From IMG/VR virus record IMGVR_UViG_3300035698_035366, positions 1 to 64,000 of that record: a DNA stretch of 64,000 nt, one strand, 5' to 3'. The translations under genes were made by a program, and so were the position numbers. The notes beneath the pieces are model-generated. The model was not told the origin of the DNA. It saw only the letters and a list, made by a program, of their open reading frames with translations, and searched no databases. How positions within the stretch are numbered: position 1 is the first letter of the stretch; every line of letters starts with the position of its first letter. Of this stretch, positions 31,401-55,748 are shown piece by piece.

Positions 31401-34400
31401 CTTCACGCAATAACTGCCATTCTTGGTGGATATTAATATCAGGATCTGAAATTTCCCAATTAACCTGAACAACACTATCAATATCTTCTAGAAGTGGTCC
31501 TGAATTAGAATAAATCAATGCGTTGGTTGCAATAGGAGAGAACCATAAAATACCAGCACTTGTCGGGTTTTCAAGTATCTGCCTAACCTGGATAGCGTTA
31601 ATTGAACGGAAATCATAAGCTGGTGTTTGATCAGTATCTTCAACCCAGAAGAAGAATACAGTCTTAAAGTCACCAATTGCTTGATCGAATTCCTGTTTTT
31701 CTACCCAAGATGGATTATCGGGATCTTTAACAGTTCCAGAATAAGTTCCTTCAGAATCTATTTTGGGTTGATCAATAACTGTTTGATAAGAAAGGGGCTC
31801 AACTGGAGATTTAGTCCATTCGTAGATTTTGATCTCTGCACCTGGTGCTAGTTTACCCCAATTTTGTCTACGGTATTCTCGGCTTCCCTGTTCATAATCA
31901 AGGTATAATGATTTACTCGTGTCCCACCACAGTCTAGCAACGGCGGCATCACCCCATGCCAATTTTTCATTAATTGTGTCCAGTTCCGGATCACCGTCAG
32001 TATAGATGGCTGGATCATAATCAATGTGGTAATAAATTTCCTCATCTGCTACTCCAGGAACTAATCCCTTACGTGGATCATTAACATTAAATCTATTCTT
32101 CACTCTATTCGTATGTGCGTTATACAATACGGAGTTGGTTATACGACGGTTTGCTACACGGAGTTCTTGTTCTCGTTCAATGGTATCAGCATCAATATCA
32201 ACAACCACCCAATGCGGTTCGTCGTCAGCACCATTTGAAATATCATCAATCCATGCTTTTGTTAAACCAATTGGAGCATTAACCGCTGGATCAACATCAA
32301 AAACTGTTTTACTTGGAAAACGAACAGGGATAAGCTGGAGAAGAGTTGGAACAATAACGTCAGTATCAATTGGTAGTGCTGTATAATCAAACGGGGCTGA
32401 AGCAATTGTAGAAACAGTAAATTCGGTTGGGTCATTGATTGAAACTACCTCAATTATTCCTTGTAAACTATTTCCTGTTTCGTTGCTTGTATCATTGTCA
32501 ATTATAAACAAAGACCCAGCAACCATAAATTCTAAGTCATTATCAACTTTAATAATCGCCTGGTCACCATCAGTAACCGTTTCAATTTGGCTACTAGTAT
32601 CAATTACTTGGTAAACTTGGAACTCATCAGCGAAGTCCTGATAAACCCAAATATGATCACCCGGCTCAATAGGATTACCATTATCTATAGCATTGAAATA
32701 CGTATCATTCAATACCGAACGGTCAAATGCAGTATAGTCAATATCAGCCAAGTTTACATAACCAGCTGAACGGTAATCACCCTTTTGATCTAAGTAGCTC
32801 GTACGCAATTCCCAAACATTATTAAAGTCAGCTGGTTTACGTTGCCATCTTGGACTCGAATCATCAATCTGTAATACATCATCGAATGGGAAATCATCTG
32901 TGTCGAAACCAGTTCCAAATTCAATTAACTGAGGATTGGTTTTGTGATCTTCCTTAAACATTTGGAATTCGATGCTTGGACGGATTTCTGTTCCGCCGAA
33001 ACGACCGATTCTAACTGCAAACTCTTCAAACACTGTAAATATTTGATTGTTTTGGCCAGTAGCCGCCTTTAAGAATTTATCCAAGCTTAGTCGAGTTCCC
33101 TTGGCTTGAATCATTCCTTGATAGAATTGGAAACTAGTATCAGGATCAATTAGAAGTTGACGAAAATAATCCCTAACTTGGTATCCAGTAATATGACGGG
33201 CGTGTTCACGTAGTGTTACGCGATCAACCGAGTCTTCGATATCAAAATAGTGCTCAAAATCAGTAACGGTTTTATCAAAGTTTTCATAAATGTTATCTGC
33301 TTGCACAATGAAACCAGCAGCATCTAACCGACCAGTCCAATTGTCAGTGATAACTGTGTTGAGCTTTAGACGCTGTTGTCTAACATTAAATACTGGATCA
33401 TAAATCAAATCATTGAATGCTGTTGTGTTGCTTAGAAGCAAAATATGCTCAAACTCTTTAACAAAGGTTCGGCATAAGAAAATACCAATTCCAGCATTAG
33501 GAGTAACCGTCATGGTGTCTTCAGAACGGACAACGGTTGTGTCTTGTGGTTCAATCCGCTGACCAGTTTTATTCAATAATGGGTAAGAACCGTTTACTAA
33601 GGTTTCAATATTTTGCGTAACGCCTTGCGGTGTTCTAAACTTTACAATATCTGATAATGGAGATAGCGCAATAAAGTTACCTTCTGCCCACTTAGTGAGT
33701 GTCCAGAACAAGAATTCCTTACCACTCTGTCTCCAATTATTGATTGTATTTGTGTCTTCATTGAATTTATCAAATATCCACCCCTCAGTTTTTAGATACC
33801 TTTCATAATTAATTAGGAATTGGTAAACATCCTGCTTTGACGTAAATTGTGTACCATAAGGAATTAATTCTGGTTGAGCATCTAAAATACCATCAGTGTA
33901 CTCAGTAACAACTACAGCATTATTTGCAACAGGTGAACCAATAAACCTCCAATTTCCTCTTTCAAAGTTTTCTGTTGATTGGTGAGCAATTGTGCATTCA
34001 AAGATGCTTGCTTGATACTGTATAATTATACCAACAGCATAAGAAGTATTTGTTTCCCAACGAGGACGTGGTTCCGGATCAGGTTCACCAACTCTAATTG
34101 AAACTTTGCGACCATTTGGATCATGTGGTAAAGTTTTGAACAATGGATTTAGTGAGTCGTAACCAAACACTTGCCATCCCTTGCCGTTCCAAGTAATAAT
34201 CACTCCGGAATAAACAAACTCCTGCAAAGAAGCTGATGAGTACAATTCAATTGGTGTGTCTTCTTGTGGTACGAGACCGAAGTTATCGGCAACAACAGTA
34301 ATATTTTCAGTCTCGGTGTAACCACCCATTTTATGACCAAGCTGGACATCAATTCCACGTAAAATATCACCAAAGTTTGTAGTAATATCTTGACCTTGGC

Positions 34401-37400
34401 TAACGACGCGATCACTAATCCACTGTTGTATACCACTACCAATATAACGTACATTGTTTACAACTTCTCCATGAACATTCAATTCACTATTTTGTGGACG
34501 GTTTTTGGTAATAGTGTTAACCCATTGTTCACGAGTAGTTCCAACAAATATTTCATCATATCGAGCTGGATCCCATGCAAATTCAATAAATCGGGCTGGT
34601 TTAATTAGATAACCAACCTGCGCAACAGCAAACGGATATGATTCAGAATTTCTCCAAACCGACTCGATTGGGCCGCCATCACCAAATTCCCAAGGACGTG
34701 AAGCATTGTCAATTGTTGGGGTTGATAAAACAATCCCTGCAGAAACTGGATTAAGAAGAGTTCCTGATGCGTCAACTGGTAAAATATTAGAAAGTCCTGG
34801 ACGGGCATAAATTGGATCAATTCCTTTACGTATTCCGTCTTTAATTTCACCATTTTCAATGTCAGTCCATAATGAACTGTTACCAGAAGTGTATGGTGAT
34901 GGACCATATTCTGCATCCCAATAAGAAGGTTTCTTGTCAAAACCAAGCATTTCCCAAGGATATAGATCGGGACGTTCAGTACCATAAACAAAACGATACA
35001 TTCCTCTCCAATAGCCTGGAACGGGTTTACCATTAAAGGTTTGGAGTCCTTTGTAATTATAAGTGAACGGTTCACCAGCAGTGGCTATAACGTTTTCTCT
35101 ATAATCAGCGTTATTTAAAATAGCCCATCGCTCAAACATAGGGCGGAATAATGTACTTACTTCATCTGGTGTATAATCAGTTTCTCTGAAGTAATTAGGA
35201 ACGAATTCGTCAATGTTAAAATCTCTAACATTTTCGCTGGTATACTTTGTATCAACCGAGGCATAAACCATATTTTCATATTGAAGTTGTGCCTGGTCTC
35301 GTGGATCAACGAGATCTAATGGATTGTTGGTTGGTAGAGTTGTTGATTCAGAAATAAGATAATACAATGACCCATCATGTCCACGTAGAACAGGTTGTGG
35401 GTTTGGTAATGTAGTATCCAAGAAAACTTCTGGTTCATAAACTGGAAAAACACCAAGAAATGATGGAGTAGCGGGGATTAAACTTCCTTCACTAATCATT
35501 CCCGAGTAATAGAATGGAAAGGTGTTTGTTTTTCCAACATTGATTTGGATGATCGCTTCATTGACCATTTGTGTAGGAGACAATGACGTGAGTTGTCCAG
35601 TCCTAAGCATCTGATCAACTTTACTAACAAATTTGTTTCTAAACCGTGTATATTCTCTTTCAACAAACCTCACAGCCTTCATATAATCTAAATTATCATC
35701 TGACGCTAAGAGCATTAATTTCAACATTGGTGCTTGGTGTTGCATAATTGAACGACCAAATGATAAATCTTGCGTAGTATCACGCCAATTGTTTAATCCA
35801 TAAGCCGTTCCTTGGAAATCTTCTTGGTTCTCGATAATTTCTCTAAAGTGGTTAAAGAATTCTGTCTGGGATACTTCTTGAATATCTTCATTATTTGGAT
35901 TAGCTACCAAATTCAATGGTATTTCATAATTTGCAACATCTTCATTTGTTGGTCGGAAATCCGGATTATGAGATCTAACTCTAACAACTGGTTCAAGTGT
36001 ACCTACGGAAGGAGTAATGCTTAGGATATTTCCAGAGATTGAAAATTCTGATTCATCTAATTGTCGACCAGCAGCCTGAACAATTAAATTTGGAACATCA
36101 CCTGGAACGTTGGCTGCTGGCTCCTGTGTAAGAGGAAACTCAGAGGTTGGAAACTTGGAAGCTTCAAACACGTCAATGATGTATTGCTTTGTTTTGTTGT
36201 TGATAAGGTTCCAGCTATTGGAATACAAATCGTCTTCTACTGTATCACCAATTTGACGGAAGAAGTAGTAACCAATTGTTTCACCAAAATCTGAGGAGAA
36301 TCGTTCAGTTGCTAGAGTGTTTTCAAAAACAATTTCACCAGTGTTGTTGAACGATAGTTTTAGACCGACGTTTGGATCAACTGGTTGGAAAGGACTTTGA
36401 TTTTCTTTATAGGTGAAAATGGTTGATCCTTGGAAATCTGAGCCAGGATAAACACCAACATCATTCAATTTCACATTATCAATATCGTAAAGCTGGAATT
36501 TTGGTGGATCATTCTTCCCCAATTTCCTAATTCCTGGGTTCCAATTTGTTCCATCAAATTCAACAACCGTTCCGCCGAATGTATTACCATATCGTATTCT
36601 GTAAACATCGTCTGATACTGCAAGATCTTTAACAAGAGTGAGTTCAATAATACCAGTTGTTTTAATACCAGATACTTCGTATATTCGATTGTTAACAGCA
36701 GGGTTGATATCACTTGTTACGAGAATCTTTAAACCATCACTAATAGCTATACCATTAAACTCATTTGTTCCGTCAACTGTTATTGCCTGTGTAACACCAT
36801 CAACTATATGACCAGCAATTCCATATTGACCATATGCTTTACCAATAATATTATTTGGATTGTCAAGTTGTGAACCTGGAAACCAAATAGTTTTTCCATT
36901 AAGCGCACCGAAGAAGTTAATCGATTCAGTATAAACAACATCAGCGGTATATGAAGGTACTCCGTAGTTGAATACTTCCAAGTCTCTTATAAATTCGATA
37001 ATTGGGCGTTTTGCTTGTAAAGAACTTGGGTCTTCTTCAATAACGGTGTTGGATATTTCAATAACATCTCTGTGATACCAATGATTACCAGTACTCCAAG
37101 GAGATCCTTCAATACTTCCACGCTCGATAAGAAAATATTCAGGTCCTGGTTCTTGATCGTTGTCAGAGGCTAGAATATCCCATAATGATGCGTCCCAACC
37201 ATCTTCGTCCCAACCGGAGAAGCTTCCTTCATCTGTTACTTCTAGAAGACGTATTCCTCTACCAACACCCTCAACACCATAAGTCTTACCATTGGTCAAG
37301 GCATTTGCATCATCGGTAATTGTTATTCTCAATCCAGAAGTAAGATCAATGGTGTTACCGTCAACGGTTACCGTCGCAGTAACTTGTCCAATAATATAAT

Positions 37401-37923
37401 TTTGAATATCTGTTGGTGAATCAACGACAATTGGGTTGGGTCCTTGGTCTAGCCAGAAATAATTACTAAATGATGCAAATTTATCTAGATCAATTGGTGG
37501 AGCCCATGAATAATATTCTTGCTCAAATAATCTATTATGATCATTAACAATACCGCCTTGAAAACGGAGGTGATTAAGGATATCTTCGTAAAACAGCGAG
37601 TTAGTCAAATTGTTATCAATATCACGCGATGTAAGGATTGGCGCTAATTGGTAATATTCACGTGGTTTTGTTTCTTCGGATAGATAAAACTCTCGAGTTG
37701 GTTCCCAGAAGAAAGTCTTTTCCCCTATAAAACCAGAAACTTTTCGGCTACGGTTAGGTTCAAATAGGTGATCAATTGTTGCACCAAAGAATTTCTTTAG
37801 TGCATCTGTTTGATTAATTACTGGTAGGAGACCAATCTGCTCACGTTTTGGTTGAACCGAACGCTCGTCGACTTGCTCTGGAACCGGGTTTCTTGGATCT
37901 TTGTTAATTTTCCGTACTGCCAT
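25498..37923 (-). CDS. Giant virion structural protein (probable baseplate wedge/fibre scaffold), 4141 aa
   Basis: 12.4-kb uninterrupted ORF directly downstream of the gp6-like gene; acidic, beta-rich, WDxxxWD motifs and internal repeats. Confidence 0.85.
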   Translation of the reverse strand: MAVRKINKDPRNPVPEQVDERSVQPKREQIGLLPVINQTDALKKFFGATIDHLFEPNRSRKVSGFIGEKTFFWEPTREFYLSEETKPREYYQLAPILTSRDIDNNLTNSLFYEDILNHLRFQGGIVNDHNRLFEQEYYSWAPPIDLDKFASFSNYFWLDQGPNPIVVDSPTDIQNYIIGQVTATVTVDGNTIDLTSGLRITITDDANALTNGKTYGVEGVGRGIRLLEVTDEGSFSGWDEDGWDASLWDILASDNDQEPGPEYFLIERGSIEGSPWSTGNHWYHRDVIEISNTVIEEDPSSLQAKRPIIEFIRDLEVFNYGVPSYTADVVYTESINFFGALNGKTIWFPGSQLDNPNNIIGKAYGQYGIAGHIVDGVTQAITVDGTNEFNGIAISDGLKILVTSDINPAVNNRIYEVSGIKTTGIIELTLVKDLAVSDDVYRIRYGNTFGGTVVEFDGTNWNPGIRKLGKNDPPKFQLYDIDNVKLNDVGVYPGSDFQGSTIFTYKENQSPFQPVDPNVGLKLSFNNTGEIVFENTLATERFSSDFGETIGYYFFRQIGDTVEDDLYSNSWNLINNKTKQYIIDVFEASKFPTSEFPLTQEPAANVPGDVPNLIVQAAGRQLDESEFSISGNILSITPSVGTLEPVVRVRSHNPDFRPTNEDVANYEIPLNLVANPNNEDIQEVSQTEFFNHFREIIENQEDFQGTAYGLNNWRDTTQDLSFGRSIMQHQAPMLKLMLLASDDNLDYMKAVRFVEREYTRFRNKFVSKVDQMLRTGQLTSLSPTQMVNEAIIQINVGKTNTFPFYYSGMISEGSLIPATPSFLGVFPVYEPEVFLDTTLPNPQPVLRGHDGSLYYLISESTTLPTNNPLDLVDPRDQAQLQYENMVYASVDTKYTSENVRDFNIDEFVPNYFRETDYTPDEVSTLFRPMFERWAILNNADYRENVIATAGEPFTYNYKGLQTFNGKPVPGYWRGMYRFVYGTERPDLYPWEMLGFDKKPSYWDAEYGPSPYTSGNSSLWTDIENGEIKDGIRKGIDPIYARPGLSNILPVDASGTLLNPVSAGIVLSTPTIDNASRPWEFGDGGPIESVWRNSESYPFAVAQVGYLIKPARFIEFAWDPARYDEIFVGTTREQWVNTITKNRPQNSELNVHGEVVNNVRYIGSGIQQWISDRVVSQGQDITTNFGDILRGIDVQLGHKMGGYTETENITVVADNFGLVPQEDTPIELYSSASLQEFVYSGVIITWNGKGWQVFGYDSLNPLFKTLPHDPNGRKVSIRVGEPDPEPRPRWETNTSYAVGIIIQYQASIFECTIAHQSTENFERGNWRFIGSPVANNAVVVTEYTDGILDAQPELIPYGTQFTSKQDVYQFLINYERYLKTEGWIFDKFNEDTNTINNWRQSGKEFLFWTLTKWAEGNFIALSPLSDIVKFRTPQGVTQNIETLVNGSYPLLNKTGQRIEPQDTTVVRSEDTMTVTPNAGIGIFLCRTFVKEFEHILLLSNTTAFNDLIYDPVFNVRQQRLKLNTVITDNWTGRLDAAGFIVQADNIYENFDKTVTDFEHYFDIEDSVDRVTLREHARHITGYQVRDYFRQLLIDPDTSFQFYQGMIQAKGTRLSLDKFLKAATGQNNQIFTVFEEFAVRIGRFGGTEIRPSIEFQMFKEDHKTNPQLIEFGTGFDTDDFPFDDVLQIDDSSPRWQRKPADFNNVWELRTSYLDQKGDYRSAGYVNLADIDYTAFDRSVLNDTYFNAIDNGNPIEPGDHIWVYQDFADEFQVYQVIDTSSQIETVTDGDQAIIKVDNDLEFMVAGSLFIIDNDTSNETGNSLQGIIEVVSINDPTEFTVSTIASAPFDYTALPIDTDVIVPTLLQLIPVRFPSKTVFDVDPAVNAPIGLTKAWIDDISNGADDEPHWVVVDIDADTIEREQELRVANRRITNSVLYNAHTNRVKNRFNVNDPRKGLVPGVADEEIYYHIDYDPAIYTDGDPELDTINEKLAWGDAAVARLWWDTSKSLYLDYEQGSREYRRQNWGKLAPGAEIKIYEWTKSPVEPLSYQTVIDQPKIDSEGTYSGTVKDPDNPSWVEKQEFDQAIGDFKTVFFFWVEDTDQTPAYDFRSINAIQVRQILENPTSAGILWFSPIATNALIYSNSGPLLEDIDSVVQVNWEISDPDINIHQEWQLLREDDPSSLIPNDIWIKMRDSIVGFDGISSDNLVPDPLLTETERYGTFIRPRQTWFRNLTKARTVFVDEVNRLLTAEPILLNRITADDNLFYVTPLPTTGFDYQVVDNAERDALIATIAIGEIVLVEATTENNNRWTRWEYTAVNTFTLIETQEVRLEDVWDYADYRGTELNNVSDTFTPTVVYADRIAFDNALAIDSVPLNTIVEITTDTNGKETWLIVADDGLKTTTTVFAEDVTFQLNDTFLAPEYQIFTNNLRNDILTPQEQNHLVFVMINFVHSEQNMVDWAFKTSYIIIRGLEEELKQTPILREDITQSIIEYIEEAKPYHTKIRDFRQDLVIPYDSNIDEALLHATDFDKPVYFDGTNFRVLDENIAEDFEVIQENSPWNEWYADLEEDGSYQRVRRLNSKIVFDRVKCTTNIPQSGTQVSKITLLSSALQIPTIGSFDLNQLTVKHNMVSVLNSRIISRVVRLTINEPVTSSYVGDFSTRRFAMPKQIVQLETLTVVLNGITIFKNGSQLSTNPDHRFAVTTDGLDILFNNAPATGLDLDITIDERFTDNDGNLTGAFVFIGTDQNPGDILNVKTLDFTGTADFDINKLTNFDTNINVSFGSKGAVHGVVDVEFEYIVTVDTFKFTSAEGLDAADRVALFYNAIDSEPQQLLTPLETKKRIKGEGFFGTDLVYNEIIRPEFRVNPIPGCDFRGTLVYGVSDPKWLEKITQTALPQQIIAAANINLRSEVMNASIKFGDNLLNLGLTYEDLTPGDGFAVTLTSAVNDFNGEEPLDIPIGTFVEDDVIYWNGIIDGDGDNGWLKLVNGNLGGVIQPFNTSAIAPIMNTEIDIDVIMNPDSNDFSELSPNQHNIVTDGTGFHRPYFASDHPEELVKVNVDSSVDIKVFYDGVPGSPIILVDRLRSNGTQKRYGLLQIPQSNAGIFVYADGVKLDQGDDYVVDWTTNEIVFEDTGGTPTIPVEGVILKISTFSHGGNRVAFSTVFEGGTDTFQLRTFFVKSSTLVFVDGEPLDPVDYVVFGDELSITTGPVPTDTRVFVVVYDTGVSETIEDNDPFTDTYVLDNPTGITEGQILVTVDSVPEPFTYTSLTGEVTLLTGIPTPGSSVRITVFNQISPSLVRTIVFAGDGTTPDTVVNGDSSLTVTLPIEQENSMPSHANMLVREDGLRLRPDRTFYQTLIPDQYLLVLDTEVDTTNGEVISLIRDGVEQTENVDYVNPSTRRGTLDTSVSMVQALSDIGLTVGDLNPGDYFTVTNLANTVITNDFQGGWGNEFSILPPDIESHVDVYDPTDLFTQSELLVEDCDDGLDGEFSYDPTTDIDSGRVYGLTTYLNRRDGIESGFSVATPTNAFNIVPVSFEEGQGILYIGNNTFSVLAADKFYRPETMDASITIADNLTNLGLTYDDLLIGDTFKVTTTVIDNFFGSLPLGSFIDGDVLYWNGPADGIDADGWRKTQNPLVPEREIHFVNPSAEENDIVFWLNDVDREYDADSTTVTILNPNPASEYQVTFFSIDDSLNIETHVYDESRDGIYQINNLPFDDSYIWFSVNGERKLYQRDYLITSAGTGWDTTPWDAGGDDDRREPVSNEGIIISDIIEVIEQYDFGIVSVVDDSEEDMEDGGGLFDEAQFDEFGNPSPTICDITYKEIQEVTKDNRGKLIPFPGSDGWDTVTSSSIIRTNPFVGTTADWLAKSKDDIVATIISGPPIQTPFAYRVFTGALGSKQFSRIADFFKLFVREEFTSTDVILKADVNPTFLESEFPIDYVYEPTASAPGVLYIGTERLEYSNVNGPLFDNTTGKRFYEFSGLNRATRLISPSPSYGIGTVIERAGPLEQISHVYEEVSPDPLISLGAEAILAESSSIDKIADGNTFVYALDIYPVERTITSVYLVDQSGSTEVLTPLINETDNKIYTINNITNVDNIILGSQIEFDVAPVADALRIIQVIPESLNLLNKQTRQINFLRKEAGTLD

Positions 37924-40900
37924 TAAATGCCAATCCTAAGTGTTGATTTATTAAAGTTTTCTACTATATCTACATCAGTAACTCTTGCTGATGAAATGAA
38001 TAATTGGTTTGTTTCTAATCTAATTTCTTCAAGTTGTCCGAAGCGGCTTTCGTCATTTAACGGTACAATTTCTACGCCACCCACAACTGTTGCATTTTGC
38101 AAATGTATAAATGCTTGAAGTTCCGAGGCATAAAAAGTATCACCAACATCCCATCTAGTAACGTCAAAAAATTCATTAATTGAGTTAATTACTCGTGTTT
38201 TCAGTTCACCGTCGGATACATCGGTTCCTTGCACCTTAATTATTTTGAATTTAGCTCTAACTTCAGCCTCTGCTCTATCCCCGAACAAGGTAACATATTC
38301 CACTGGACGCCAAACAAGAGTATCGGATACCATTTTGTTCGTATCAAAGAAGTTAAAGTCTCTTCTCAACTCTTCACTTGTTGGTGGAAGCGGTGCTGGA
38401 TTAGACGGGCCAACTGGTTTCGTTCCAGCAATAAAGCGGCGATATTCTATATCGTATCCTTCGGTTAATGCATAAAGATCAATGATGTTTGTAATGGCTG
38501 GGTCAATACGTCGGTCTCTATCAGCAATGTGCTTCCAAATAAAGCGCATACCAGACCTACCCGTACGGGCTTTGAAAACCCTTAATGTTAATGTATAATT
38601 ACCAAGAATAGTTTTATCCAGGTCGTCTGTTGATGCGTTTGTATATTCATAAAATGCGCCATCAGTAGCGTTATAAACAATCGTTCCCTGTACTATCTTT
38701 GATCTATCTTCTGCATTAGGTAGTGGGTCTGTTGCATTAATCCCAGGGACTGATACAATTGTAAAAATTGGTATTTCCGTCTCTGTTTGATCCAAATTAG
38801 TTACTACTTCATGAAAAACAAACGGTGAAGTGGTCACACCTTCTTCCACCGCCTTGACAAAAATTGATGGATCATCTGGAATACCGTCTTCATCCAAATC
38901 AGTGTATGAAACAATAACACGACGTGGTTCCTGGAAACCATCTGGATAAAGGAACACATCAGTAACTGCCATTTTGATATCTTCACCTAGACCTATAGCA
39001 GGATTATTTGGTTGTGCCACTGTAGATGGAATAGTAATTGTATCACTTGATACACGGCCAGCTAATAATCCCTGGACTTTTCTGAACTGGTTAACGAAGA
39101 AACGAACATCACGAACGCTTTCCCAGATGAAACGTAATCCCCGTGCTCGTACTTTCCATACATCACCACTAAAGTCCATACGTAACAACCATGACGCATC
39201 GAGGTTTTGTAGATCAACATTGCCTGCGTTGTCTAAGCTGAATGGTGTAGAGACGGGTGAGATGTTTGCGGCTGTGATGATTACCCAATTTTGGTTAACT
39301 GCATCAAAGCGCAAACCGAAAGTTTCTTCATTATCAATCTCTGCGCGTACAGCGTTAATTTCCGAGAGAATGAGTGTATTGCGGAATGATGGGAAGACTG
39401 TTATAACTTTGGATCCAGTGATGACTGGTTCTGCAAGCGTTACTCGACCTTTACCACTGGCAAAAATACCATCACCACCGTCGGAACCATTATTGGTTAC
39501 GCTTTGTACTGCTACCCAGTTCTTTGCTGCGGTGTTGGGGTCTTCAAACTCAATAATTGCGCCTTCATCGATATAATTACGGGTTTGGTCAACAGTGTCG
39601 ATTGGCCCGATTTGTATAGCTGATGTATTACCAGAAACATTGAAGAAACCAGTTGAGCTGAATGCCAAATCTGATGCTTGAGTCCATTCCAAGTCTTCGT
39701 CATTTCCTTTAATAATTCGGGGATTGGTTGGATCTGGATCGAGCGTCCCTAGCGTGGCGTCAACGTATGGAAAAATCTCATAATAAAATTGCTGCAATTC
39801 TCTATCGAGTAGTGCTGGATTAACAGTTTCAGTTATAATTTCTGCAGAAGTTTTGTTCGATGACAGTGGAATTTCAGTGTAGAAATCGTTTGGCTCTTGA
39901 TAAAACATACCATCATCAGCAATAACTTTTACACTTTGTGAAGTTGAAGTGGGATCATTTAGATCGATGAAACGACTGTGGCCACTATATGTTCTGTTTA
40001 ATGCTTTTAGCTTTAAAATGCGTGTATCTTGTAGAGGGAAGACATTATAATCTTCACCATTAACCATTCTGTTCTGTGTATAAAATACTTGTGGAGCACG
40101 TTCACGGATTTGGTCGATTGATTCACTGATGGCAGAATTTGAAACTGTTTCTTGAAGATTCATTACCAACGTTAAGGAATGTGAATCACCGCGAGCATTA
40201 AAATATGGTATAGATATTTGGACACCGCGCATATTGGATGGTTTGATATCAAAAAGTTGATTAGCAGATACCCTATAATATGAACGTAAGGTACCAGTTG
40301 GAACATTACCAAACACACCATCACCGAAACGTAAACTTATTTGATCATTGTCACGTGTAATTACTGAGAAAATATCATTGATATTATTAACCAATGAATT
40401 GAAAATAACATTGTTACCAACAATAGCCGGAACCGGTGTCCAATTAGTAAAAGGTGTCCCATCACCATTAATTGATTGTACAAACACATCAAAATTATTG
40501 ATATTAGGTGTATTGATATTAATAACTCTATTTTCAATTGGAACTGATAGATTGAAATCTCTAAAATTCAATGTTCCTTGCTTAAAGTACATAAAGAACC
40601 CTGTATTAGCTGAAGAGTTCCCATTGCCATCATTACGATAAATGATATGTGATGTATAATCAGGAGTTGGATTTCTTTCTGTGAAACCAGTTGTTTCATT
40701 GAAATCAACGTTTACTATTTCAAAGTTGAACGAGCCCTGGTTTGTATTAGCACTAAAGGGATATTGGCCAACATCAACTGGGTCGGTATCAATCGCATAC
40801 AAATCAGTTGGTATATTGTTTACAATTCCGTTTTTAACTGGTTGACCAAATGGATTTGTTGTTTGGAACGCAGAGTTCATAATTAAACTCCATTGTTCGA

Positions 40901-41357
40901 AGAAATCTGGATTATTAGCATCATTCCAAACAATATTTGCGTTTTGGAGGTTCTGCCCAAGAGAATCAACAATTCTTTCTGAAGTTCGGATCGCAACAAC
41001 TTTCAATAAGCCACTAGAGCCAATATTACGTGTTGGTTGATATGAAAGAAGTCTTCCCATCCGTAGAAGTGATTCCTTTCTTTCAGCGGTATCAATAAAG
41101 TTTTCCCGTGTATTCAAATCCATACGGAAAGCCAGGGATTGCCCCAGATAAGCCATTAAATCTACAAGTGCCACAAATTCAGATGATTCAATCCAATCGT
41201 TAAAGTCTTCAGGAAAGTTGAATCGGATATAATCAATCATCGACTGGCGGATGGTATCGAAATCATATGCATTAAAATTAATATCAGAAAATGCTCGATA
41301 TATAACTGTCCAGTCTTCTGCAGAAAAAAGCTCACTTTGTCGGCGAATTTGTGCCAT
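37923..41357 (-). CDS. Baseplate wedge subunit, T4 gp6-like, 1144 aa
   Basis: DFDTIRQSMIDYIR.NFPEDFNDWIESSE, RENFIDTAERKESL, ESIDQIRERAP..FYTQNRMVNGEDY motifs. Confidence 0.85.
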   Translation of the reverse strand: MAQIRRQSELFSAEDWTVIYRAFSDINFNAYDFDTIRQSMIDYIRFNFPEDFNDWIESSEFVALVDLMAYLGQSLAFRMDLNTRENFIDTAERKESLLRMGRLLSYQPTRNIGSSGLLKVVAIRTSERIVDSLGQNLQNANIVWNDANNPDFFEQWSLIMNSAFQTTNPFGQPVKNGIVNNIPTDLYAIDTDPVDVGQYPFSANTNQGSFNFEIVNVDFNETTGFTERNPTPDYTSHIIYRNDGNGNSSANTGFFMYFKQGTLNFRDFNLSVPIENRVININTPNINNFDVFVQSINGDGTPFTNWTPVPAIVGNNVIFNSLVNNINDIFSVITRDNDQISLRFGDGVFGNVPTGTLRSYYRVSANQLFDIKPSNMRGVQISIPYFNARGDSHSLTLVMNLQETVSNSAISESIDQIRERAPQVFYTQNRMVNGEDYNVFPLQDTRILKLKALNRTYSGHSRFIDLNDPTSTSQSVKVIADDGMFYQEPNDFYTEIPLSSNKTSAEIITETVNPALLDRELQQFYYEIFPYVDATLGTLDPDPTNPRIIKGNDEDLEWTQASDLAFSSTGFFNVSGNTSAIQIGPIDTVDQTRNYIDEGAIIEFEDPNTAAKNWVAVQSVTNNGSDGGDGIFASGKGRVTLAEPVITGSKVITVFPSFRNTLILSEINAVRAEIDNEETFGLRFDAVNQNWVIITAANISPVSTPFSLDNAGNVDLQNLDASWLLRMDFSGDVWKVRARGLRFIWESVRDVRFFVNQFRKVQGLLAGRVSSDTITIPSTVAQPNNPAIGLGEDIKMAVTDVFLYPDGFQEPRRVIVSYTDLDEDGIPDDPSIFVKAVEEGVTTSPFVFHEVVTNLDQTETEIPIFTIVSVPGINATDPLPNAEDRSKIVQGTIVYNATDGAFYEYTNASTDDLDKTILGNYTLTLRVFKARTGRSGMRFIWKHIADRDRRIDPAITNIIDLYALTEGYDIEYRRFIAGTKPVGPSNPAPLPPTSEELRRDFNFFDTNKMVSDTLVWRPVEYVTLFGDRAEAEVRAKFKIIKVQGTDVSDGELKTRVINSINEFFDVTRWDVGDTFYASELQAFIHLQNATVVGGVEIVPLNDESRFGQLEEIRLETNQLFISSARVTDVDIVENFNKSTLRIGI

Positions 41358-50984: not shown

Positions 50985-51902
50985 ATGGCCCGTAGGAATT
51001 ACCTCAACAACCGCGATCTTTTATTAGAAATACACAAAAGCAAACTTACCTTCTGCGAATATTTGGACGATAAACATCTATACCACGATGTCATTGTTAA
51101 TGATCTAAGCGAAATCAATTCAACCCTGATAAAGGAAACCCTTGAAGAAAAGGCAAACAAAATAACAAGGGATAAAAGAGCAGCAAATAGAGAAGAAGGC
51201 ATCAAAGAAACAGTTGAACCAATTGATCCAGAAACATTATTGGTTGATGATCTTGTTTTCCGTGTTATGACTTTTGAACACGTTCCCAAAACAGAAGAAC
51301 GGATCAGAAAAGCAAAAACCTCTGATCAAGAACACACAAAATGCAATTTTCCACCATTCAAACATTATATTCTTGAAAACTTTCGAGTTAATCGTTTAGG
51401 TAATTATACCGACCTCGAGTTTAAAGAGGTTCTGCGTTCACATTGGGAAGGTGGATTCGATAATGGGCATTTTGTTCTTGAAAAAGGAAAGATTTCAGAA
51501 AAATTAGCTCGCATGTTTATGCTCCTTGTTTCCCGTAATGGTATGAAAGGTAATTGGAGAAATTATACATACAATGATGAAATGCAGGGTCAAGCGTTAC
51601 TTCAATTGAGCCAAGTTGGTCTACAATTTAATGAGGCAAAATCATCTAACCCATTTTCATATTATACTGAAACTGTAAATCATTCGTTTACTCGCATATT
51701 AAATAACGAAAAGAAGGGACAGAAAATCAGAGATGACATACTTATCGCTAGTGGTGCATCACCATCATATACCCGTCAAGTAGAAAATGATATGGAATTG
51801 AAAAAATTGGGCGAGGAGCAAGGGTGGGCCAAACCATTAGAACGAAAACCAGGGAGACCAGGACGGAAGCCCGCAAATAAAACAATACCATTACCCGAGT
51901 AA
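50985..51902 (+). CDS. Sigma factor for late transcription, T4 gp55-like, 305 aa
   Basis: NYLNNRDLL N-terminus; NWRNYTYNDEM, FNEAKSSNPFSYYT, FTRILNNEKK motifs; upstream of gp47/gp46 as in T4-like phages. Confidence 0.85.
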   Translation: MARRNYLNNRDLLLEIHKSKLTFCEYLDDKHLYHDVIVNDLSEINSTLIKETLEEKANKITRDKRAANREEGIKETVEPIDPETLLVDDLVFRVMTFEHVPKTEERIRKAKTSDQEHTKCNFPPFKHYILENFRVNRLGNYTDLEFKEVLRSHWEGGFDNGHFVLEKGKISEKLARMFMLLVSRNGMKGNWRNYTYNDEMQGQALLQLSQVGLQFNEAKSSNPFSYYTETVNHSFTRILNNEKKGQKIRDDILIASGASPSYTRQVENDMELKKLGEEQGWAKPLERKPGRPGRKPANKTIPLPE

Positions 51903-51963: not shown

Positions 51964-52989
51964 ATGAATAATCAATTATTTAATAAAGTAGCGTGCTTCA
52001 CCGATATTCACTTTGGCAAGAGCTCAAATTCTGAAGATTATAACGTCAAATGTGATCAGTTCGTTGATTGGTTTATTGAAAAATCAAAAGCTGCTGGTGC
52101 TGAAAGTTGTATTTTTCTAGGGGACTGGCATGAAAGCCGTATTAGTCTACAAGTAAAAACACTCAACTATAGTCTCCGGTGTATGGAAAAACTATCTGAA
52201 GCTTTTGATAATTTCTGGTTTATTCCGGGCAATCATGATATTTTCCATAGAACAAAGAGAGAATATAACTCCATTGTAATGGGTAGAAATCTTAGCAATA
52301 TTAACATCGTAAATGATATTTTTTGCGAAGGTAATGTTGCTATTGTTCCTTGGTTAGTTGGCGACGAATGGAAAAAAGTACGAAAGCTTAAATGTCGATA
52401 CATGTTCGGGCATTTTGAATTACCAAGATTCTTAATGAATGCAATGGTAGAGATGGGTGATCATGGGGGATTAAAATCAGAAGACTTGAAAGGTCCAGAA
52501 TTTGTATTCTCCGGCCACTTCCACAAGCGACAAGTCCGTGATAATATCATTTATATCGGTAATGCATTCCCGCAAAACTATACTGATGCGTGGGATGATG
52601 ATCGTGGCATGATGCTATTAGAATGGGGTAAGGAGCCTGAGTTCTTTACGTGGCAAGATCAACCTCTCTTCCGAACCTATAATCTTTCAGATATTATTGA
52701 GGAGCCAGAGAAGCACATATACAAGCACATTAATGCTCGGGTTACTGTTGATATCGAAATGTCGTATGAAGAGTCGCAGGTTCTGAAAGAAACTTTTCGG
52801 TCTGCTTTTGGTGCAAATGATATCAAATTCTTACACAAACATACTGAAGTTGAAGATGCGCAATGGGATGAAAATGTTGTGTTCCAATCAGTTGATCAAA
52901 TTGTGGTGGAAGGTTTAACTTCATTAGATGAAAAATCAGCTTATGATAAGAATCTTTTGGTAGGTATATACAACCAAATAGGCGAGTAA
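51964..52989 (+). CDS. Recombination endonuclease subunit, gp47/SbcD/Mre11-like, 341 aa
   Basis: FTDIHFG, FLGDWH, PGNHD, FGHFE, FSGHFH motifs. Confidence 0.92.
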   Translation: MNNQLFNKVACFTDIHFGKSSNSEDYNVKCDQFVDWFIEKSKAAGAESCIFLGDWHESRISLQVKTLNYSLRCMEKLSEAFDNFWFIPGNHDIFHRTKREYNSIVMGRNLSNINIVNDIFCEGNVAIVPWLVGDEWKKVRKLKCRYMFGHFELPRFLMNAMVEMGDHGGLKSEDLKGPEFVFSGHFHKRQVRDNIIYIGNAFPQNYTDAWDDDRGMMLLEWGKEPEFFTWQDQPLFRTYNLSDIIEEPEKHIYKHINARVTVDIEMSYEESQVLKETFRSAFGANDIKFLHKHTEVEDAQWDENVVFQSVDQIVVEGLTSLDEKSAYDKNLLVGIYNQIGE

Positions 52990-52991
52990 AT

Positions 52992-53429
52992 ATGCAGCCA
53001 AAATCAGAATATCTAAGATACCATAAGATATGGAGAAATGCTGAAATAGAGGAGATATATAAAGAAACTATGGTAGAATTTTTATATTCAAATTCACATT
53101 TTTTAGAAGCACCATTAGGTCATGCAACACTAGATTATGTATATTCTATACAATTTCAGTTGCCTGGTAGTTTTTCTAGATCAAAATATTTAAGATTACT
53201 TGATGAAATAAATGATCATTTTAATGAACAATTAGAAAGTCACAATTTTTTCTATCTAACAATCGGGGATGAATGTTTTGTGATTTTTATGGAATGTTCT
53301 GAAGAGATAGACGATGTGTTGTTGAAACTCGCAACTTCGTCACAAGTGTTAAATCAACACACTAAAGAAGAATATAATAAAAGTGTTGATGAGATTAATT
53401 TAACCCGCAATACAAAATATAATCCGTAA
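52992..53429 (+). CDS. Hypothetical protein, 145 aa, between gp47 and gp46
   Basis: AT-rich ORF 2 nt after the gp47 stop. Confidence 0.6.
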   Translation: MQPKSEYLRYHKIWRNAEIEEIYKETMVEFLYSNSHFLEAPLGHATLDYVYSIQFQLPGSFSRSKYLRLLDEINDHFNEQLESHNFFYLTIGDECFVIFMECSEEIDDVLLKLATSSQVLNQHTKEEYNKSVDEINLTRNTKYNP

Positions 53430-53495: not shown

Positions 53496-55748
53496 ATGTT
53501 AACGATCAAATCTATAACTATGAAAAATTTCCTGAGTGTAGGTAATGTTACGCAAGCAATCAATTTATCTGATAAAGGGTTGACACTTGTTCTAGGACAA
53601 AACATTGATCTTGGTACCGATGGTTCACGAAATGGTGTTGGTAAATCTACCATCATCCAAGCGTTATGTTATGGGTTATATGGTACTCCGTTAACAAATA
53701 TTAAAAAAGATAATTTAATCAACAAAACAAATGAAAAAAATATGTTTGTTACGGTTGAGTTTTCAAAGAATGACATTAACTATAAAATTGAACGCGGTCG
53801 GAAACCAAACACGATACGATTTCTAGTTAATGATAAACAATTCAATACCGATGAAGAAGGTGATGATGAAGCACATGGCGACATGCGGGTTACACAGTTG
53901 CATATCAATAGTATTCTTGGCCTATCACGAGAAATGTTTAAACATATTTTCGCTCTAAATACGGTTACTGAACCTTTCCTTGCGCTTGGTGCTCACCCAC
54001 AAAGACAAATTATCGAAGAACTACTTGGTGTTACCCAATTATCTGAAAAGGGTGAAAAACTAAAAGAACTGAATCGGACAACAAAGGAATCAATTACGTC
54101 TGAAGAATTTCGTATCAAATCTATGCAAGAAGCTAATAGCACTATTCAATCAAATATTAATAATTTAAAGACTAGAGCAAGTGGTTGGAAAGTAAAGCAT
54201 AAGAAGGATATTAATGATGTGATCAATGCGTTAGATCAATTGTCTCATGTTTCAATCGACGATGAAATTTCTATCCATAAAGCGTTAATTGTTGTCAAGG
54301 AATTAACAACAGAAAAAGATACCATTCAATCAAATATTAATAACCTGAAGAATAGATCAAATAGTTGGGGATTGAAACATGAGAAGGACATTAACGATGT
54401 GATTAATACATTAGATCAATTGTCTCATGTTTCAATCGATGATGAAATCTCTATTCATAAATCTTTAATTGTTGCTGAAGGATTAAGAACGGAAAAAGAT
54501 ACTATTGATATAAAATTGAAGACAGAGAATAAAAATAAAACGAGAATTGAAAAACAAATAAGTAGCTATAAAACACAGATTAGTGGTATAGACAGGCAAA
54601 TTGAAACAACCAACGAGCAATTGAAGAAAGCAGAAGAGCACGGTTGCCCAACTTGTGGTCAGGAATTGCATGACGAAAAACATGAGGAAATTGTAAATTC
54701 TATTAAAAATACTTTAGACGACCTTACACAGCAAATAACTGAATTAAACAATGATATTAATGAGTTAGAAACATCTTTGTTGGAAATAGTTAAAACAATC
54801 GACGGTATAAACGCCAATATCGAAGCAGTTGAAAAAAGTATAGAAGAAATGGGAGAAATTTCTACTCCATTCTATTCGGATATTGAGGAAGCATACAATC
54901 ATCGCGGCTCCTTTGAAAGTTTACAACGTGAGAAAGAGCGCATCGAGAGTGAAATTAATCCTTTCGATGAACAAATTGAACACTTTAATGTCAATTTCGA
55001 ATCGGTTGAAAAAAGTATAGAAGAAATGGGAGAAATATCAACTCCGTTCTATTCAGATATTGAGGAAGCCTATAATCACCGTAGCTCTTTAGAAGAATTA
55101 AAGCGTGAGAAAGACCGCATTGAGGGTGAAATTAACCCTTTCGATGAACAAATTGAACAACTTACGGAAAATGGTTTACAGGAAGTTTCATATGATCAAT
55201 TGAATTCGCTCACCACACAACGGGAACATCAAGAATTTCTTATCAAACTCCTCCTCAATAAGGACTCATTTATTCGAAAGAAAATCATTGAACAAAACCT
55301 TGCGTACCTTAATCATCGACTGAACAGTTACCTAGATAAACTCGGCTTGCCACATGAAGTTATTTTCCGCAATGATCTTTCTGTAGAAATTACTGAACTT
55401 GGTAGGGATTTTGATTTTGATAATTTAAGCCGCGGTGAAAGAAACCGTTTGATACTTGGACTTAGCTTTAGTTTTCGAGATGTTTGGGAAAGTTTGAACA
55501 TGAGCTGCAATCTAATGTTCATTGACGAACTAATTGATTCCGGAATGGATCCAGTCGGGGTTGAAAATTCTCTAAGTGTATTGAAAAGTATGGGAAGAGA
55601 TCAAGGCAAGGACGTATTCCTTATCAGTCACAAGGAAGAGCTATTATCAAGAGTAAGCCGAGTCATGTTGGTGAAGAAAGAAGGCGGGTTCACTAACTTC
55701 GTTGAGGACGTTGAGGATATTGAAGAAGTTGAAATAGATTTAGATTAA
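53496..55748 (+). CDS. Recombination ATPase subunit, gp46/SbcC/Rad50-like, 750 aa
   Basis: KNFLSVGN, Walker A GSRNGVGKST, zinc hook CPTC, signature LSRGE, Walker B FIDELID, FLISH. Confidence 0.93.
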   Translation: MLTIKSITMKNFLSVGNVTQAINLSDKGLTLVLGQNIDLGTDGSRNGVGKSTIIQALCYGLYGTPLTNIKKDNLINKTNEKNMFVTVEFSKNDINYKIERGRKPNTIRFLVNDKQFNTDEEGDDEAHGDMRVTQLHINSILGLSREMFKHIFALNTVTEPFLALGAHPQRQIIEELLGVTQLSEKGEKLKELNRTTKESITSEEFRIKSMQEANSTIQSNINNLKTRASGWKVKHKKDINDVINALDQLSHVSIDDEISIHKALIVVKELTTEKDTIQSNINNLKNRSNSWGLKHEKDINDVINTLDQLSHVSIDDEISIHKSLIVAEGLRTEKDTIDIKLKTENKNKTRIEKQISSYKTQISGIDRQIETTNEQLKKAEEHGCPTCGQELHDEKHEEIVNSIKNTLDDLTQQITELNNDINELETSLLEIVKTIDGINANIEAVEKSIEEMGEISTPFYSDIEEAYNHRGSFESLQREKERIESEINPFDEQIEHFNVNFESVEKSIEEMGEISTPFYSDIEEAYNHRSSLEELKREKDRIEGEINPFDEQIEQLTENGLQEVSYDQLNSLTTQREHQEFLIKLLLNKDSFIRKKIIEQNLAYLNHRLNSYLDKLGLPHEVIFRNDLSVEITELGRDFDFDNLSRGERNRLILGLSFSFRDVWESLNMSCNLMFIDELIDSGMDPVGVENSLSVLKSMGRDQGKDVFLISHKEELLSRVSRVMLVKKEGGFTNFVEDVEDIEEVEIDLD
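54141..54500 (+). repeat. In-frame tandem duplication, 2 x 180 bp (60 aa), in the gp46 N-terminal coil
   Basis: Units start ACTATTCAATCAAATATTAATAA (54141) and ACCATTCAATCAAATATTAATAA (54321). Confidence 0.92.
54816..55160 (+). repeat. In-frame tandem duplication, 2 x 177 bp (59 aa), in the gp46 C-terminal coil
   Basis: GTTGAAAAAAGTATAGAAGAAATGGGAGAAAT at 54828 and 55005. Confidence 0.92.

What the first reader, a model, noticed from the sequence alone, without database searches (positions are those of the whole stretch)
54141..55160. Mirror-image duplications lengthen both arms of the gp46 (Rad50-like) coiled coil equally
Seen: a 60-aa tandem duplication (54141-54500) before the CPTC zinc hook (54645-56) and a separate 59-aa duplication (54816-55160) after it. 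They sit about 48 and 53 codons from the hook. Known: Rad50/SbcC arms are antiparallel coils folded at the hook, so these segments should pair with each other. The A-A'-hook-C-C' pattern cannot come from one simple tandem duplication; it needs two compensating events or a nested double crossover. High DNA identity suggests it is recent. Inference: a snapshot of selection keeping coil register while arm length grows.
Basis: partly seen in the sequence, partly recalled or inferred. Interest (0 to 1): 0.6.

Follow-up and report, generated by a model that had tools for sequence, protein, structure and literature searches.

The report
Paired duplications lengthen phage Rad50 arms
A giant salt-lake phage's DNA-repair protein (a Rad50/gp46 relative) has doubled one 60-residue segment in each of its two arm strands at matching positions, and its relatives gain or lose this segment only as a pair.

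Summary
ORF 53496-55748 (+) encodes an intact 750-aa Rad50/SbcC-type ATPase, a T4 gp46 homolog, lying next to a gp47/Mre11 gene. It has two in-frame tandem duplications: A/A' (54141-54500, 2x60 aa, 83% nt identity) and C/C' (54810-55163, 2x59 aa, 85% nt). They lie 49-168 and 52-169 residues from the CPTC hook, so they should face each other in the folded-back coil.

Contigs from an independent sample cross both junctions, so this is not an assembly artefact. It is not recent: dS is about 0.7 and dN/dS about 0.14 for both pairs, and their divergences are indistinguishable.

The duplicated unit is a conserved arm module. Among 120 close homologs, 81 have 1+1 copies, 39 (ours included) have 2+2, and none has 2+1 or 1+2. 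Across 261 relatives the two arm lengths correlate at r=0.98.

On a head-domain tree this protein sits inside strongly supported clades of 1+1 forms. The copy-number state needs at least 4 changes, and a single origin of all 2+2 forms is rejected (AU p=5e-10). Cultured jumbo phages GAP32 and Vibrio phage 2.275.O carry an old, diverged 2+2 version.

Physical pairing of the copies and the number of mutational events are inferred, not shown.

The parts
51964..52989 (+). gp47 / Mre11 / SbcD-like nuclease subunit (341 aa), the partner of gp46
   Evidence: Pfam Metallophos E=5.9e-07. PHROG 100 'SbcD-like subunit' E=3.8e-53. The same order (late sigma factor, gp47, gp46) is seen in phages PAC2 and GAP32.
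53496..55748 (+). gp46 / Rad50 / SbcC-like ATPase, 750 aa, intact ORF (P0001)
   Evidence: PHROG 77 'SbcC-like subunit' E=5.9e-108 over aa 1-745. Pfam AAA_23 and Rad50_zn_hook. Foldseek best match is Rad50 7zr1_C, E=6.6e-19. It is the only copy in the 296-kb record.
53496..54029 (+). N-terminal ATPase lobe (aa 1-178): Walker A G47-x-G49-K50-S51, Q-loop Q134
   Evidence: These residues are invariant columns in the 119-sequence alignment. The AF2 model shows a beta/alpha head with pLDDT mostly 80-95.
54141..54320 (+). Arm module A, head-proximal copy (aa 216-275); holds family-invariant W231 and E257
   Evidence: Module HMM hit 216-273, E=5e-19. Invariant columns. AF2 helix break at aa 250-253.
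54321..54500 (+). Arm module A', hook-proximal copy (aa 276-335); 83% nt and 78% aa identical to A
   Evidence: HMM hit 276-333, E=4e-17. AF2 helix break at aa 310-313. A contig of independent sample X3 (54263-54413) crosses the A/A' junction with 0 differences.
54501..54635 (+). Distal N-arm helix (aa 336-380); starts with ACTATT, the same hexamer that starts module A
   Evidence: AF2 helix 314-380. Flank comparison. This segment is about 14 aa longer than in all relatives.
54636..54671 (+). Zinc hook (aa 381-392); CPTC at 54645-54656 (C384, C387)
   Evidence: Pfam Rad50_zn_hook E=1.8e-06. C384 and C387 are invariant in 119 sequences.
54672..54809 (+). Distal C-arm helix (aa 393-438)
   Evidence: AF2 helix 393-452. 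This segment is about 18 aa longer than in relatives.
54810..54986 (+). Arm module C, hook-proximal copy (aa 439-497), with motifs G-x3-P-F-Y, EAYNHR and NPFDEQI
   Evidence: HMM hit 439-497, E=1.6e-19. AF2 breaks at aa 453-462 and 485-489.
54987..55163 (+). Arm module C', head-proximal copy (aa 498-556); 85% nt and 81% aa identical to C; holds invariant Y519 and H528
   Evidence: AF2 breaks at aa 511-521 and 544-549. 205-207-nt contigs (54828/54830-55034) cross the C/C' junction in X1, X2 and the independent X3.
55164..55748 (+). C-terminal ATPase lobe (aa 557-750): signature L644-S-R-G-E648, Walker B D677-E678, H-loop H712
   Evidence: Invariant columns. AF2 pLDDT about 90.

Best explanation
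ORF 53496-55748 encodes the Rad50/SbcC-type subunit (T4 gp46 homolog) of the Mre11-Rad50 nuclease of a jumbo phage from a salt lake.

In this protein family each arm contains a conserved 'rung'. On the outgoing strand it is a module of about 60 aa (A: helix, 4-residue break, helix; invariant W and E). On the returning strand it is a module of about 59 aa (C: a G-x3-P-x-Y-Y loop, an EAxNHR helix and an NP[FY]xEQI kink).

In this lineage each module was duplicated in tandem. The doubled stretches lie 49-168 residues before the hook and 52-169 residues after it. In the antiparallel coil the outer copies (A with C') and the inner copies (A' with C) therefore face each other, and each arm strand gains about 60 residues. 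That would be roughly 9 nm if helical (my arithmetic at about 0.15 nm per residue).

Shown here:
- The repeats, their frame and their mirror positions.
- Their equal divergence and purifying selection on all four copies.
- Their presence in an independent sample.
- Their origin inside a clade of single-module relatives.
- The absence of one-arm-only forms in the family.

Inferred:
- The copies pair physically as stated.
- Two separate microhomology-type tandem duplications happened in quick succession, the second restoring arm balance.
- The longer rod changes the reach or clamp size of the nuclease.
For: - Repeats and coordinates.
- Family assignment and intact motifs.
- Selection and age: dN about 0.10, dS 0.66-0.76, omega about 0.14 for both pairs; 31/180 vs 27/177 nt differences, Fisher p=0.67.
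- Not an artefact: a 31-kb contig spans A-A', a 205-nt contig bridges C/C', and the shared 32-mer has twice the depth. Independent sample X3 has contigs across both junctions. There were no joints and no differences.
- Module counts in 120 homologs: 81 with 1A+1C, 39 with 2A+2C (38 long forms plus ours), none mixed.
- Arm lengths between head anchors and hook in 261 relatives: r=0.98. N minus C is 6-35 in all but two, and neither exception is a module duplication.
- Lineage-specific origin: A/A' and C/C' are sister pairs nested among modules of the protein's own clade. In the IQ-TREE head tree the protein sits in clades of 1+1 forms with support 99/98, 99/97 and 99/95. The state needs at least 4 changes. 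The AU test rejects one clade of all 2+2 forms, p=4.8e-10.
- Structure models: ours has N-arm breaks 71-74 and 131-134 residues from the hook, facing C-arm breaks at 66-75 and 124-134. The 1+1 relative P0003 has one such matched pair, at 57-60 and 52-61.
- Only this protein among 270 has young arm repeats.
Against: - AF2 confidence is only 50-68 in aa 250-320 and 460-530. No coordinates or contact map could be read, so pairing rests on break positions and on the general Rad50 fold.
- The nearest relative is only 58% identical overall, so no close 1+1 or 2+1 sister brackets the event.
- Gene conversion between old copies could mimic a younger duplication.
- Only assembled contigs could be laid, not raw reads.
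- The head tree could mislead if the arms were exchanged by recombination. Head and module trees disagree on the placement of P0012/P0055.
- No expression or biochemical data were obtained.
Confidence: 0.72

Rival explanations
1. One compound event rather than two. A block comprising module A, the hook region and module C, copied from a sister or closely related genome, replaced the hook region alone. This is a graft with two junctions that lengthens both arm strands at once, so no unbalanced intermediate ever existed.
For: The divergences of the two pairs are indistinguishable. The inner block A'-hook-C is a complete copy of the ancestral unit. No unbalanced forms are seen anywhere in the family. 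If the donor was a related phage, the copies would have been diverged at birth, which would also explain dS of about 0.7.
Against: The two junctions need offsets of opposite sign, so this is not a simple double crossover in one misaligned register (my reasoning). No donor lineage can be identified. A and A' are each other's closest relatives, as are C and C'. Only a 6-nt ACTATT microhomology is visible, and only at the A boundary.
Confidence: 0.17
2. An old 2+2 form, like the 690-706-aa relatives, whose copies were homogenised by gene conversion in both arms and so only look young.
For: Diverged 2+2 forms are common in the family. In one relative, P0167, the C copies are more alike (29/57) than the A copies (22/58), which hints at conversion or uneven constraint.
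Against: The protein is nested within three strongly supported clades made up otherwise only of 1+1 forms, so several independent paired losses would be needed. The AU test rejects grouping it with the other 2+2 forms. Its repeat units are 60/59 aa against 56 and 50-57 aa in the old forms. Conversion would have to have stopped at the same time in both arms.
Confidence: 0.07
3. The extra modules do not extend the rod. A' and C fold together into a side bundle or a second docking site, for example for gp47 or the neighbouring 145-aa protein, and the reach of the arm is unchanged.
For: The modules are not plain coiled coil. They hold conserved loops and invariant W, E, Y and H residues. AF2 confidence is low exactly there.
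Against: AF2 predicts continued long helices with breaks that face each other, repeating the pattern of the single-module relative. Across the family the added lengths are always balanced, which fits an extended antiparallel rod.
Confidence: 0.08
4. Assembly artefact: collapsed or expanded repeats in a metagenome contig.
For: The window is a metagenome assembly. The contig graph breaks at an exact 32-mer shared by C and C'.
Against: The copies differ at 15-17% of positions, so they assemble unambiguously. One contig spans all of A-A'. A unique 205-nt contig joins C to C' at single depth while the shared 32-mer has double depth. An independent sample shows both junctions. The frame is kept and omega is 0.14.
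Confidence: 0.02

Closest known systems
Bacteriophage T4 gp46/gp47 (Rad50/Mre11 homologs)
   Same: It has the same two-gene nuclease with gp47 upstream. It shares the ABC-ATPase head split by an antiparallel coil, and a CxxC zinc hook.
   Different: T4 gp46 is 560 aa. My arm-module HMMs do not detect the A or C module in it. The protein here has arm strands of 198 and 182 residues between head anchors and hook, with doubled modules.
gp46 of cultured jumbo phages: Cronobacter phage GAP32, Vibrio phage 2.275.O (2+2) and Pseudomonas phage PAC2 (1+1)
   Same: They belong to the same protein family (36-53% identity) and carry the same A and C arm modules. GAP32 (713 aa) and the Vibrio phage (718 aa) have two A modules and two, or about two, C modules. 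PAC2 (584 aa) has one of each.
   Different: Their doubled modules are old. Copy-to-copy identity in the long class is 21-50% for A and 21-57% for C, so nothing shows at the DNA level. Here the copies are 78-81% identical in protein and arose separately inside a 1+1 clade.
Periodic arm-length constraint of SMC proteins (Buermann et al. 2017, PMC5344682)
   Same: That paper reports natural SMC arm lengths that are multimodal in steps of about 100 aa, and engineered arms that work only in certain length regimes. It states that whether Rad50 arms have periodic elements is unclear. Arm length in this gp46 family is also multimodal.
   Different: That work concerns SMC proteins and engineered resizing. 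Here the step is about 56-60 aa per strand, has a visible mutational origin, and occurs in a phage Rad50.
Engineered paired truncations of Rad50 arms (yeast Rad50, Hohl 2011; T4 gp46, Barfoot 2015), as cited in PMC5344682, PMC5082667 and PMC7752040
   Same: Both strands of the coil are changed together to keep the arm paired. Arm length matters for function, according to those reviews.
   Different: Those are laboratory deletions. This is a natural paired insertion. The two primary papers are not in the held library, so details come from the citing papers only.

Membership tests
Rad50 / SbcC / T4 gp46 family (SMC-like ABC ATPase of the Mre11-Rad50 nuclease) | N-terminal Walker A (P-loop) and Q-loop | tested here: met
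   N46 G47 V48 G49 K50 S51 and Q134 are invariant columns in 119 homologs. Pfam AAA_23 E=4.8e-09.
Rad50 / SbcC / T4 gp46 family (SMC-like ABC ATPase of the Mre11-Rad50 nuclease) | C-terminal signature motif, Walker B and H-loop | tested here: met
   L644-S645-R646-G647-E648, D677-E678 and H712 are invariant.
Rad50 / SbcC / T4 gp46 family (SMC-like ABC ATPase of the Mre11-Rad50 nuclease) | Central CxxC zinc hook | tested here: met
   C384-P-T-C387. Pfam Rad50_zn_hook 28.1 bits against a cutoff of 24.3. Both cysteines are invariant.
Rad50 / SbcC / T4 gp46 family (SMC-like ABC ATPase of the Mre11-Rad50 nuclease) | Two long helical arm strands of matched length that fold back at the hook | tested here: met
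   AF2 predicts long helices at aa 179-380 and 393-560. The fold matches full-length Rad50 7zr1_C, E=6.6e-19. Arm strands are 198 and 182 residues. The antiparallel contacts themselves could not be read from the model.
Rad50 / SbcC / T4 gp46 family (SMC-like ABC ATPase of the Mre11-Rad50 nuclease) | Adjacent Mre11/SbcD-type phosphoesterase gene | tested here: met
   ORF 51964-52989: Metallophos and PHROG 100 'SbcD-like' E=3.8e-53.
Rad50 / SbcC / T4 gp46 family (SMC-like ABC ATPase of the Mre11-Rad50 nuclease) | ATP-dependent nuclease activity together with the Mre11 subunit | not testable with these tools
   Needs biochemistry.
Jumbo-phage gp46 subfamily with A/C arm modules (defined here) | At least one A module (W..KH ... 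DI..EI..H) in the N arm and one C module (P.[FY]Y ... EA.NHR ... NP[FY].EQI) in the C arm, in equal numbers | tested here: met
   Two A hits (E=5e-19, 4e-17) and two C hits (E=1.6e-19, 3.6e-20). All 120 close homologs have equal numbers.

The most novel reading that the evidence does not exclude
The arms of this phage Rad50 family are built from a discrete, conserved 'rung': one A module paired with one C module. Arm length evolves in quanta by gaining or losing a whole rung on both strands together. This has happened at least four times in the family. The window holds the youngest case, with both duplications still legible in the DNA and of equal age. If so, Rad50 arms, like SMC arms, are confined to particular lengths, and this gene and its relatives supply natural 1+1 and 2+2 variants for testing that.
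Probability: 0.4. Interest if true: 0.65.

Novelty: new variant of a known kind. Interest (0 to 1): 0.5.

Why it matters
Proteins of the Rad50 and SMC type must change both strands of a folded-back coil together if arm length is to evolve. How that happens, and whether only certain lengths work, is open for Rad50; Buermann et al. 2017 say so explicitly.

This gene shows the mutational route directly. Two in-frame tandem duplications of partner segments have equal age, and both are kept by selection. The wider family shows that the same rung is added or removed only in pairs, repeatedly.

That supplies natural 1+1 and 2+2 proteins, some from cultured phages such as PAC2, GAP32 and Vibrio phage 2.275.O. 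With them one can test how arm length and the conserved arm motifs affect nuclease function.

It does not reveal a new kind of system.

Tried and rejected
- Complex prediction with A-A' (aa 216-335) against C-C' (aa 439-556) gave no verdict (score 0.00, controls not run). I do not count it for or against pairing.
- Self-BLAST for internal repeats in 270 relatives returned nothing, not even for this protein. This was probably HSP culling. I replaced it with a diagonal identity scan.
- The secondary-structure rows came from a mistyped string (755 vs 750 letters) and should be ignored. The break positions I cite come from the element list.
- My module HMMs found no A or C module in T4 gp46. Whether T4 has a homologous rung is open.
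- Five literature searches found no earlier description of paired arm duplications in Rad50/SbcC/gp46. That covers the held library only. Barfoot et al. 2015 on the T4 gp46 coil is not held.
- The apparent mixed module counts (2+1, 1+2, 1+0) among distant representatives reflect limited HMM sensitivity. Head-anchored arm lengths are balanced in those proteins.
- P0138, the one clear arm-length outlier, has unrelated inserts, not a module duplication.
- A test of which copies are more ancestral-like gave outer copies 13 and inner copies 6 of the decided sites. This is not significant.
- Module trees of about 60 columns are too short to decide how many of the older 2+2 clades are independent gains.
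Full report
**Setting.** The window is the first 64 kb of a 296-kb virus record. That record is a trimmed part of a 362.9-kb contig of a JGI metagenome, which is identical to the window over 8253 nt. The runs that hold the sequence are salt-lake metagenomes.

Around the finding, all on the + strand, lie:
- a gp55-like late sigma factor (50985-51902);
- a gp47/Mre11/SbcD-like phosphoesterase (51964-52989);
- an unassigned 145-aa ORF (52992-53429);
- the 750-aa ORF 53496-55748.

That ORF matches PHROG 77, 'SbcC-like subunit', at E=5.9e-108 over its whole length, and also Pfam AAA_23 and Rad50_zn_hook. Its AF2 model (mean pLDDT 82) matches full-length Rad50 best (7zr1_C, E=6.6e-19). Walker A, Q-loop, signature motif, Walker B, H-loop and both hook cysteines are invariant columns in a 119-sequence alignment. 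The closest cultured relatives are jumbo phages: Atu_ph07, PAC2 (PA5oct-like), the GAP32 group and Vibrio phage 2.275.O.

Two independent repeat finders report the same two tandem repeats:
- 54141-54320 / 54321-54500, 180 nt, 83% identical;
- 54810-54986 / 54987-55163, 177 nt, 85% identical.

Both are in frame. A is aa 216-275 and A' is aa 276-335. C is aa 439-497 and C' is aa 498-556. The hook CPTC is aa 384-387.

Measured from the hook cysteines, the doubled stretch covers residues 49-168 on the N-terminal strand and 52-169 on the C-terminal strand (module rows). The two duplicated regions therefore start and end at the same distance from the fold-back point, to within three residues. In a Rad50-type antiparallel coil this means they face each other: A with C' as the outer pair and A' with C as the inner pair.

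**It is not an assembly artefact.** Only assembled contigs of public runs could be laid, not raw reads.
- In the two likely source samples, one 31-kb contig covers all of A-A' and the hook without a difference.
- The contig graph breaks only at an exact 32-mer shared by C and C'. That 32-mer has about double depth (19-20 against 10-16).
- A unique 205-nt contig at single depth runs from C into C'.
- A third, independent sample (X3) has contigs across the A/A' junction (54263-54413) and the C/C' junction (54828-55034), again without differences.
- No joints or indels were reported.
- The copies differ at 15-17% of positions, so an assembler has no reason to confuse them.

**Age and selection.** The A pair differs at 31 of 180 nt and the C pair at 27 of 177 nt (Fisher p=0.67). 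Most differences are at third codon positions. Nei-Gojobori estimates are dN 0.104 and dS 0.757 for A, and dN 0.094 and dS 0.658 for C, so omega is about 0.14 for both.

All four copies have therefore been kept under purifying selection, and the two duplications cannot be told apart in age. With dS near 0.7 the event is not recent. The estimates rest on 60 codons each, and other methods give dS between 0.26 and 0.55.

**What was duplicated.** The unit is not anonymous coiled coil. Aligned with relatives, the N-arm unit carries W231, I254 and E257. The C-arm unit carries Y519, A525, H528, L535, P548, Q552 and I553. All of these are invariant across those 12 sequences. W231, E257, Y519 and H528 remain invariant across 119 sequences.

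AF2 predicts the following for this protein:
- N arm: helices 179-249, 254-309 and 314-380.
- C arm: helices 393-452, 463-484, 490-510, 522-543 and 550-560.
- The N-arm breaks lie 131-134 and 71-74 residues from the hook. They face the long C-arm breaks at 124-134 and 66-75 residues.

The single-module relative P0003 (600 aa, pLDDT 87) shows one such matched pair, at 57-60 and 52-61 residues from its hook, plus one short kink. The duplication therefore added exactly one more 'rung' of a conserved, slightly irregular segment of the arm.

Confidence in this protein's model is only 50-68 across aa 250-320 and 460-530, and I could not read contacts. The pairing is an inference from geometry, not an observation.

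**The family.** The word-index search returned 120 close homologs in sharp length classes: 584-605 aa, 690-706 aa, this protein at 750 aa, and one of 634 aa.
- HMMs built from the modules find 1A+1C in all 80 short proteins and in the 634-aa one, and 2A+2C in all 38 long ones and in ours. No 2+1 or 1+2 form was found.
Copy-to-copy identity there is 21-50% for A and 21-57% for C.
- It is also present in cultured phages. Vibrio phage 2.275.O is 2+2, GAP32 is about 2+2, and PAC2 is 1+1.

Because the claim rests on an absence, I also ran the exhaustive profile search (22,337 hits at E<=0.001, best 150 representatives examined).
- Module HMMs lose sensitivity in the more distant representatives, so I measured arm strands from conserved head anchors to the hook instead.
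- In 261 proteins the two strand lengths correlate at r=0.98. N minus C is 6-35 in all but two.
- An unbalanced 60-aa duplication would give about +79 or -41, and none does.
- The clearest outlier, P0138 (+58), has an E/R/K-rich helix inserted in one strand and a proline-rich non-helical stretch in the other. That is not a module duplication.
- Arm length is multimodal across the family.

**Independent origin.**
- On an IQ-TREE tree of head-domain columns only (40 taxa, 361 columns), this protein lies inside nested clades with support 99/98, 99/97 and 99/95. Every other member of those clades is 1+1.
- The 1+1 versus 2+2 state needs at least four changes, in all bootstrap trees.
- Forcing all 2+2 proteins into one clade costs 116.6 log-likelihood units (AU p=4.8e-10). 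The group was defined by the trait, but I tested it after seeing the tree.
- In the module trees, A and A' are sisters, and C and C' are sisters. Both pairs sit among the modules of the protein's own clade.
- The repeat period is 60/59 aa here, against 56 and 50-57 aa in the old 2+2 forms.

This protein's doubling is therefore a separate, later gain. Whether the other three changes are gains or losses cannot be told without a root. Head and module trees disagree for P0012 and P0055, which may reflect recombination.

Among 270 proteins only this one has young arm repeats. Its distal arm segments are also 14 and 18 residues longer than in all relatives, again on both strands.

**Mechanism.** I take the most likely history to be two microhomology-type tandem duplications in quick succession, the second restoring balance. 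The hexamer ACTATT begins module A and recurs just after A'. An unbalanced intermediate might have been tolerated briefly, for instance by looping out a helix-break-helix unit or through complementation in mixed infections. This is inference.

A single compound event cannot be excluded. A block A-hook-C from a sister or related genome could have replaced the hook region. This would also explain the equal divergence and the lack of intermediates. It needs two junctions with offsets of opposite sign, so it is not a simple misaligned double crossover.

Gene conversion of an old 2+2 form is unlikely given the tree.

The functional consequence is inferred only: a rod about 60 residues longer per strand, and a second copy of whatever the conserved rung does.

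**Context in the literature.** A review puts phage Rad50 coils at about 100 Angstrom. It gives about 250 Angstrom for bacteria, about 300 for archaea and almost 600 for eukaryotes (PMC7752040). For SMC proteins, natural arm lengths are multimodal in steps of about 100 aa, and only certain engineered lengths work. The same paper says that for Rad50 it is unclear whether periodic elements matter (PMC5344682). I found no earlier description of paired arm duplications in Rad50/SbcC/gp46 in the held library.

**Verdict.** Its value is as a clear natural example of compensated arm lengthening, and as evidence that this family changes arm length by whole paired modules.

Noticed in passing
window 52992-53429 (+): A 145-aa ORF sits between gp47 and gp46 and has no Pfam or PHROG match. 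PAC2, GAP32 and Vibrio phage 2.275.O have no gene there. T4 has the small genes 46.1 and 46.2 at that place.
   Followed up: partly
relative P0032 (634 aa), aa ~455-540: A 100% identical 43-aa tandem repeat lies inside the C-terminal ATPase lobe, covering the LSRGE signature region. It is on a 2.7-kb contig. It is either an assembly artefact or a very young and probably harmful duplication.
   Followed up: no
relatives P0172, P0223 and about 15 others of 828-1055 aa: About 270-350 residues are inserted directly after the P-loop. P0172 and P0223 match LAGLIDADG_3 and Hom_end, and P0223 also matches Intein_splicing weakly, below its gathering score. This looks like an intein with a homing endonuclease in the Walker A motif of phage gp46.
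   Followed up: partly
relative P0138 (683 aa): This is the only clearly unbalanced pair of arm strands in 261 proteins (193 vs 135 residues). The N strand has a long E/R/K/Q-rich helix and the C strand a proline-rich, probably non-helical insert.
   Followed up: partly
window 54501-54542 and 54672-54809: Apart from the duplications, both distal arm segments are longer than in all relatives. The distance from the start of the hook-proximal A module to the hook is 108 residues against 94. The distance from the hook to the start of C is 52 against 34. This is a second balanced length change in the same gene.
   Followed up: partly
window 54141-54146 and 54501-54506: The hexamer ACTATT begins module A and recurs immediately after A' (ACCATT begins A'). 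This may be microhomology left from the duplication junction. Nothing comparable is visible at the C/C' boundaries.
   Followed up: partly
window 25498-37923 (-) and 37923-41357 (-): Two very large ORFs of 4141 aa and 1144 aa lie back to back, and another of at least 1326 aa runs off the window start (1-3978, -). I did not examine them.
   Followed up: no
relative P0167 (533-aa fragment of the 690-aa class): Its two C modules are more alike (29/57 identical) than its two A modules (22/58). This may reflect gene conversion or uneven constraint between the arms in an old 2+2 form.
   Followed up: no
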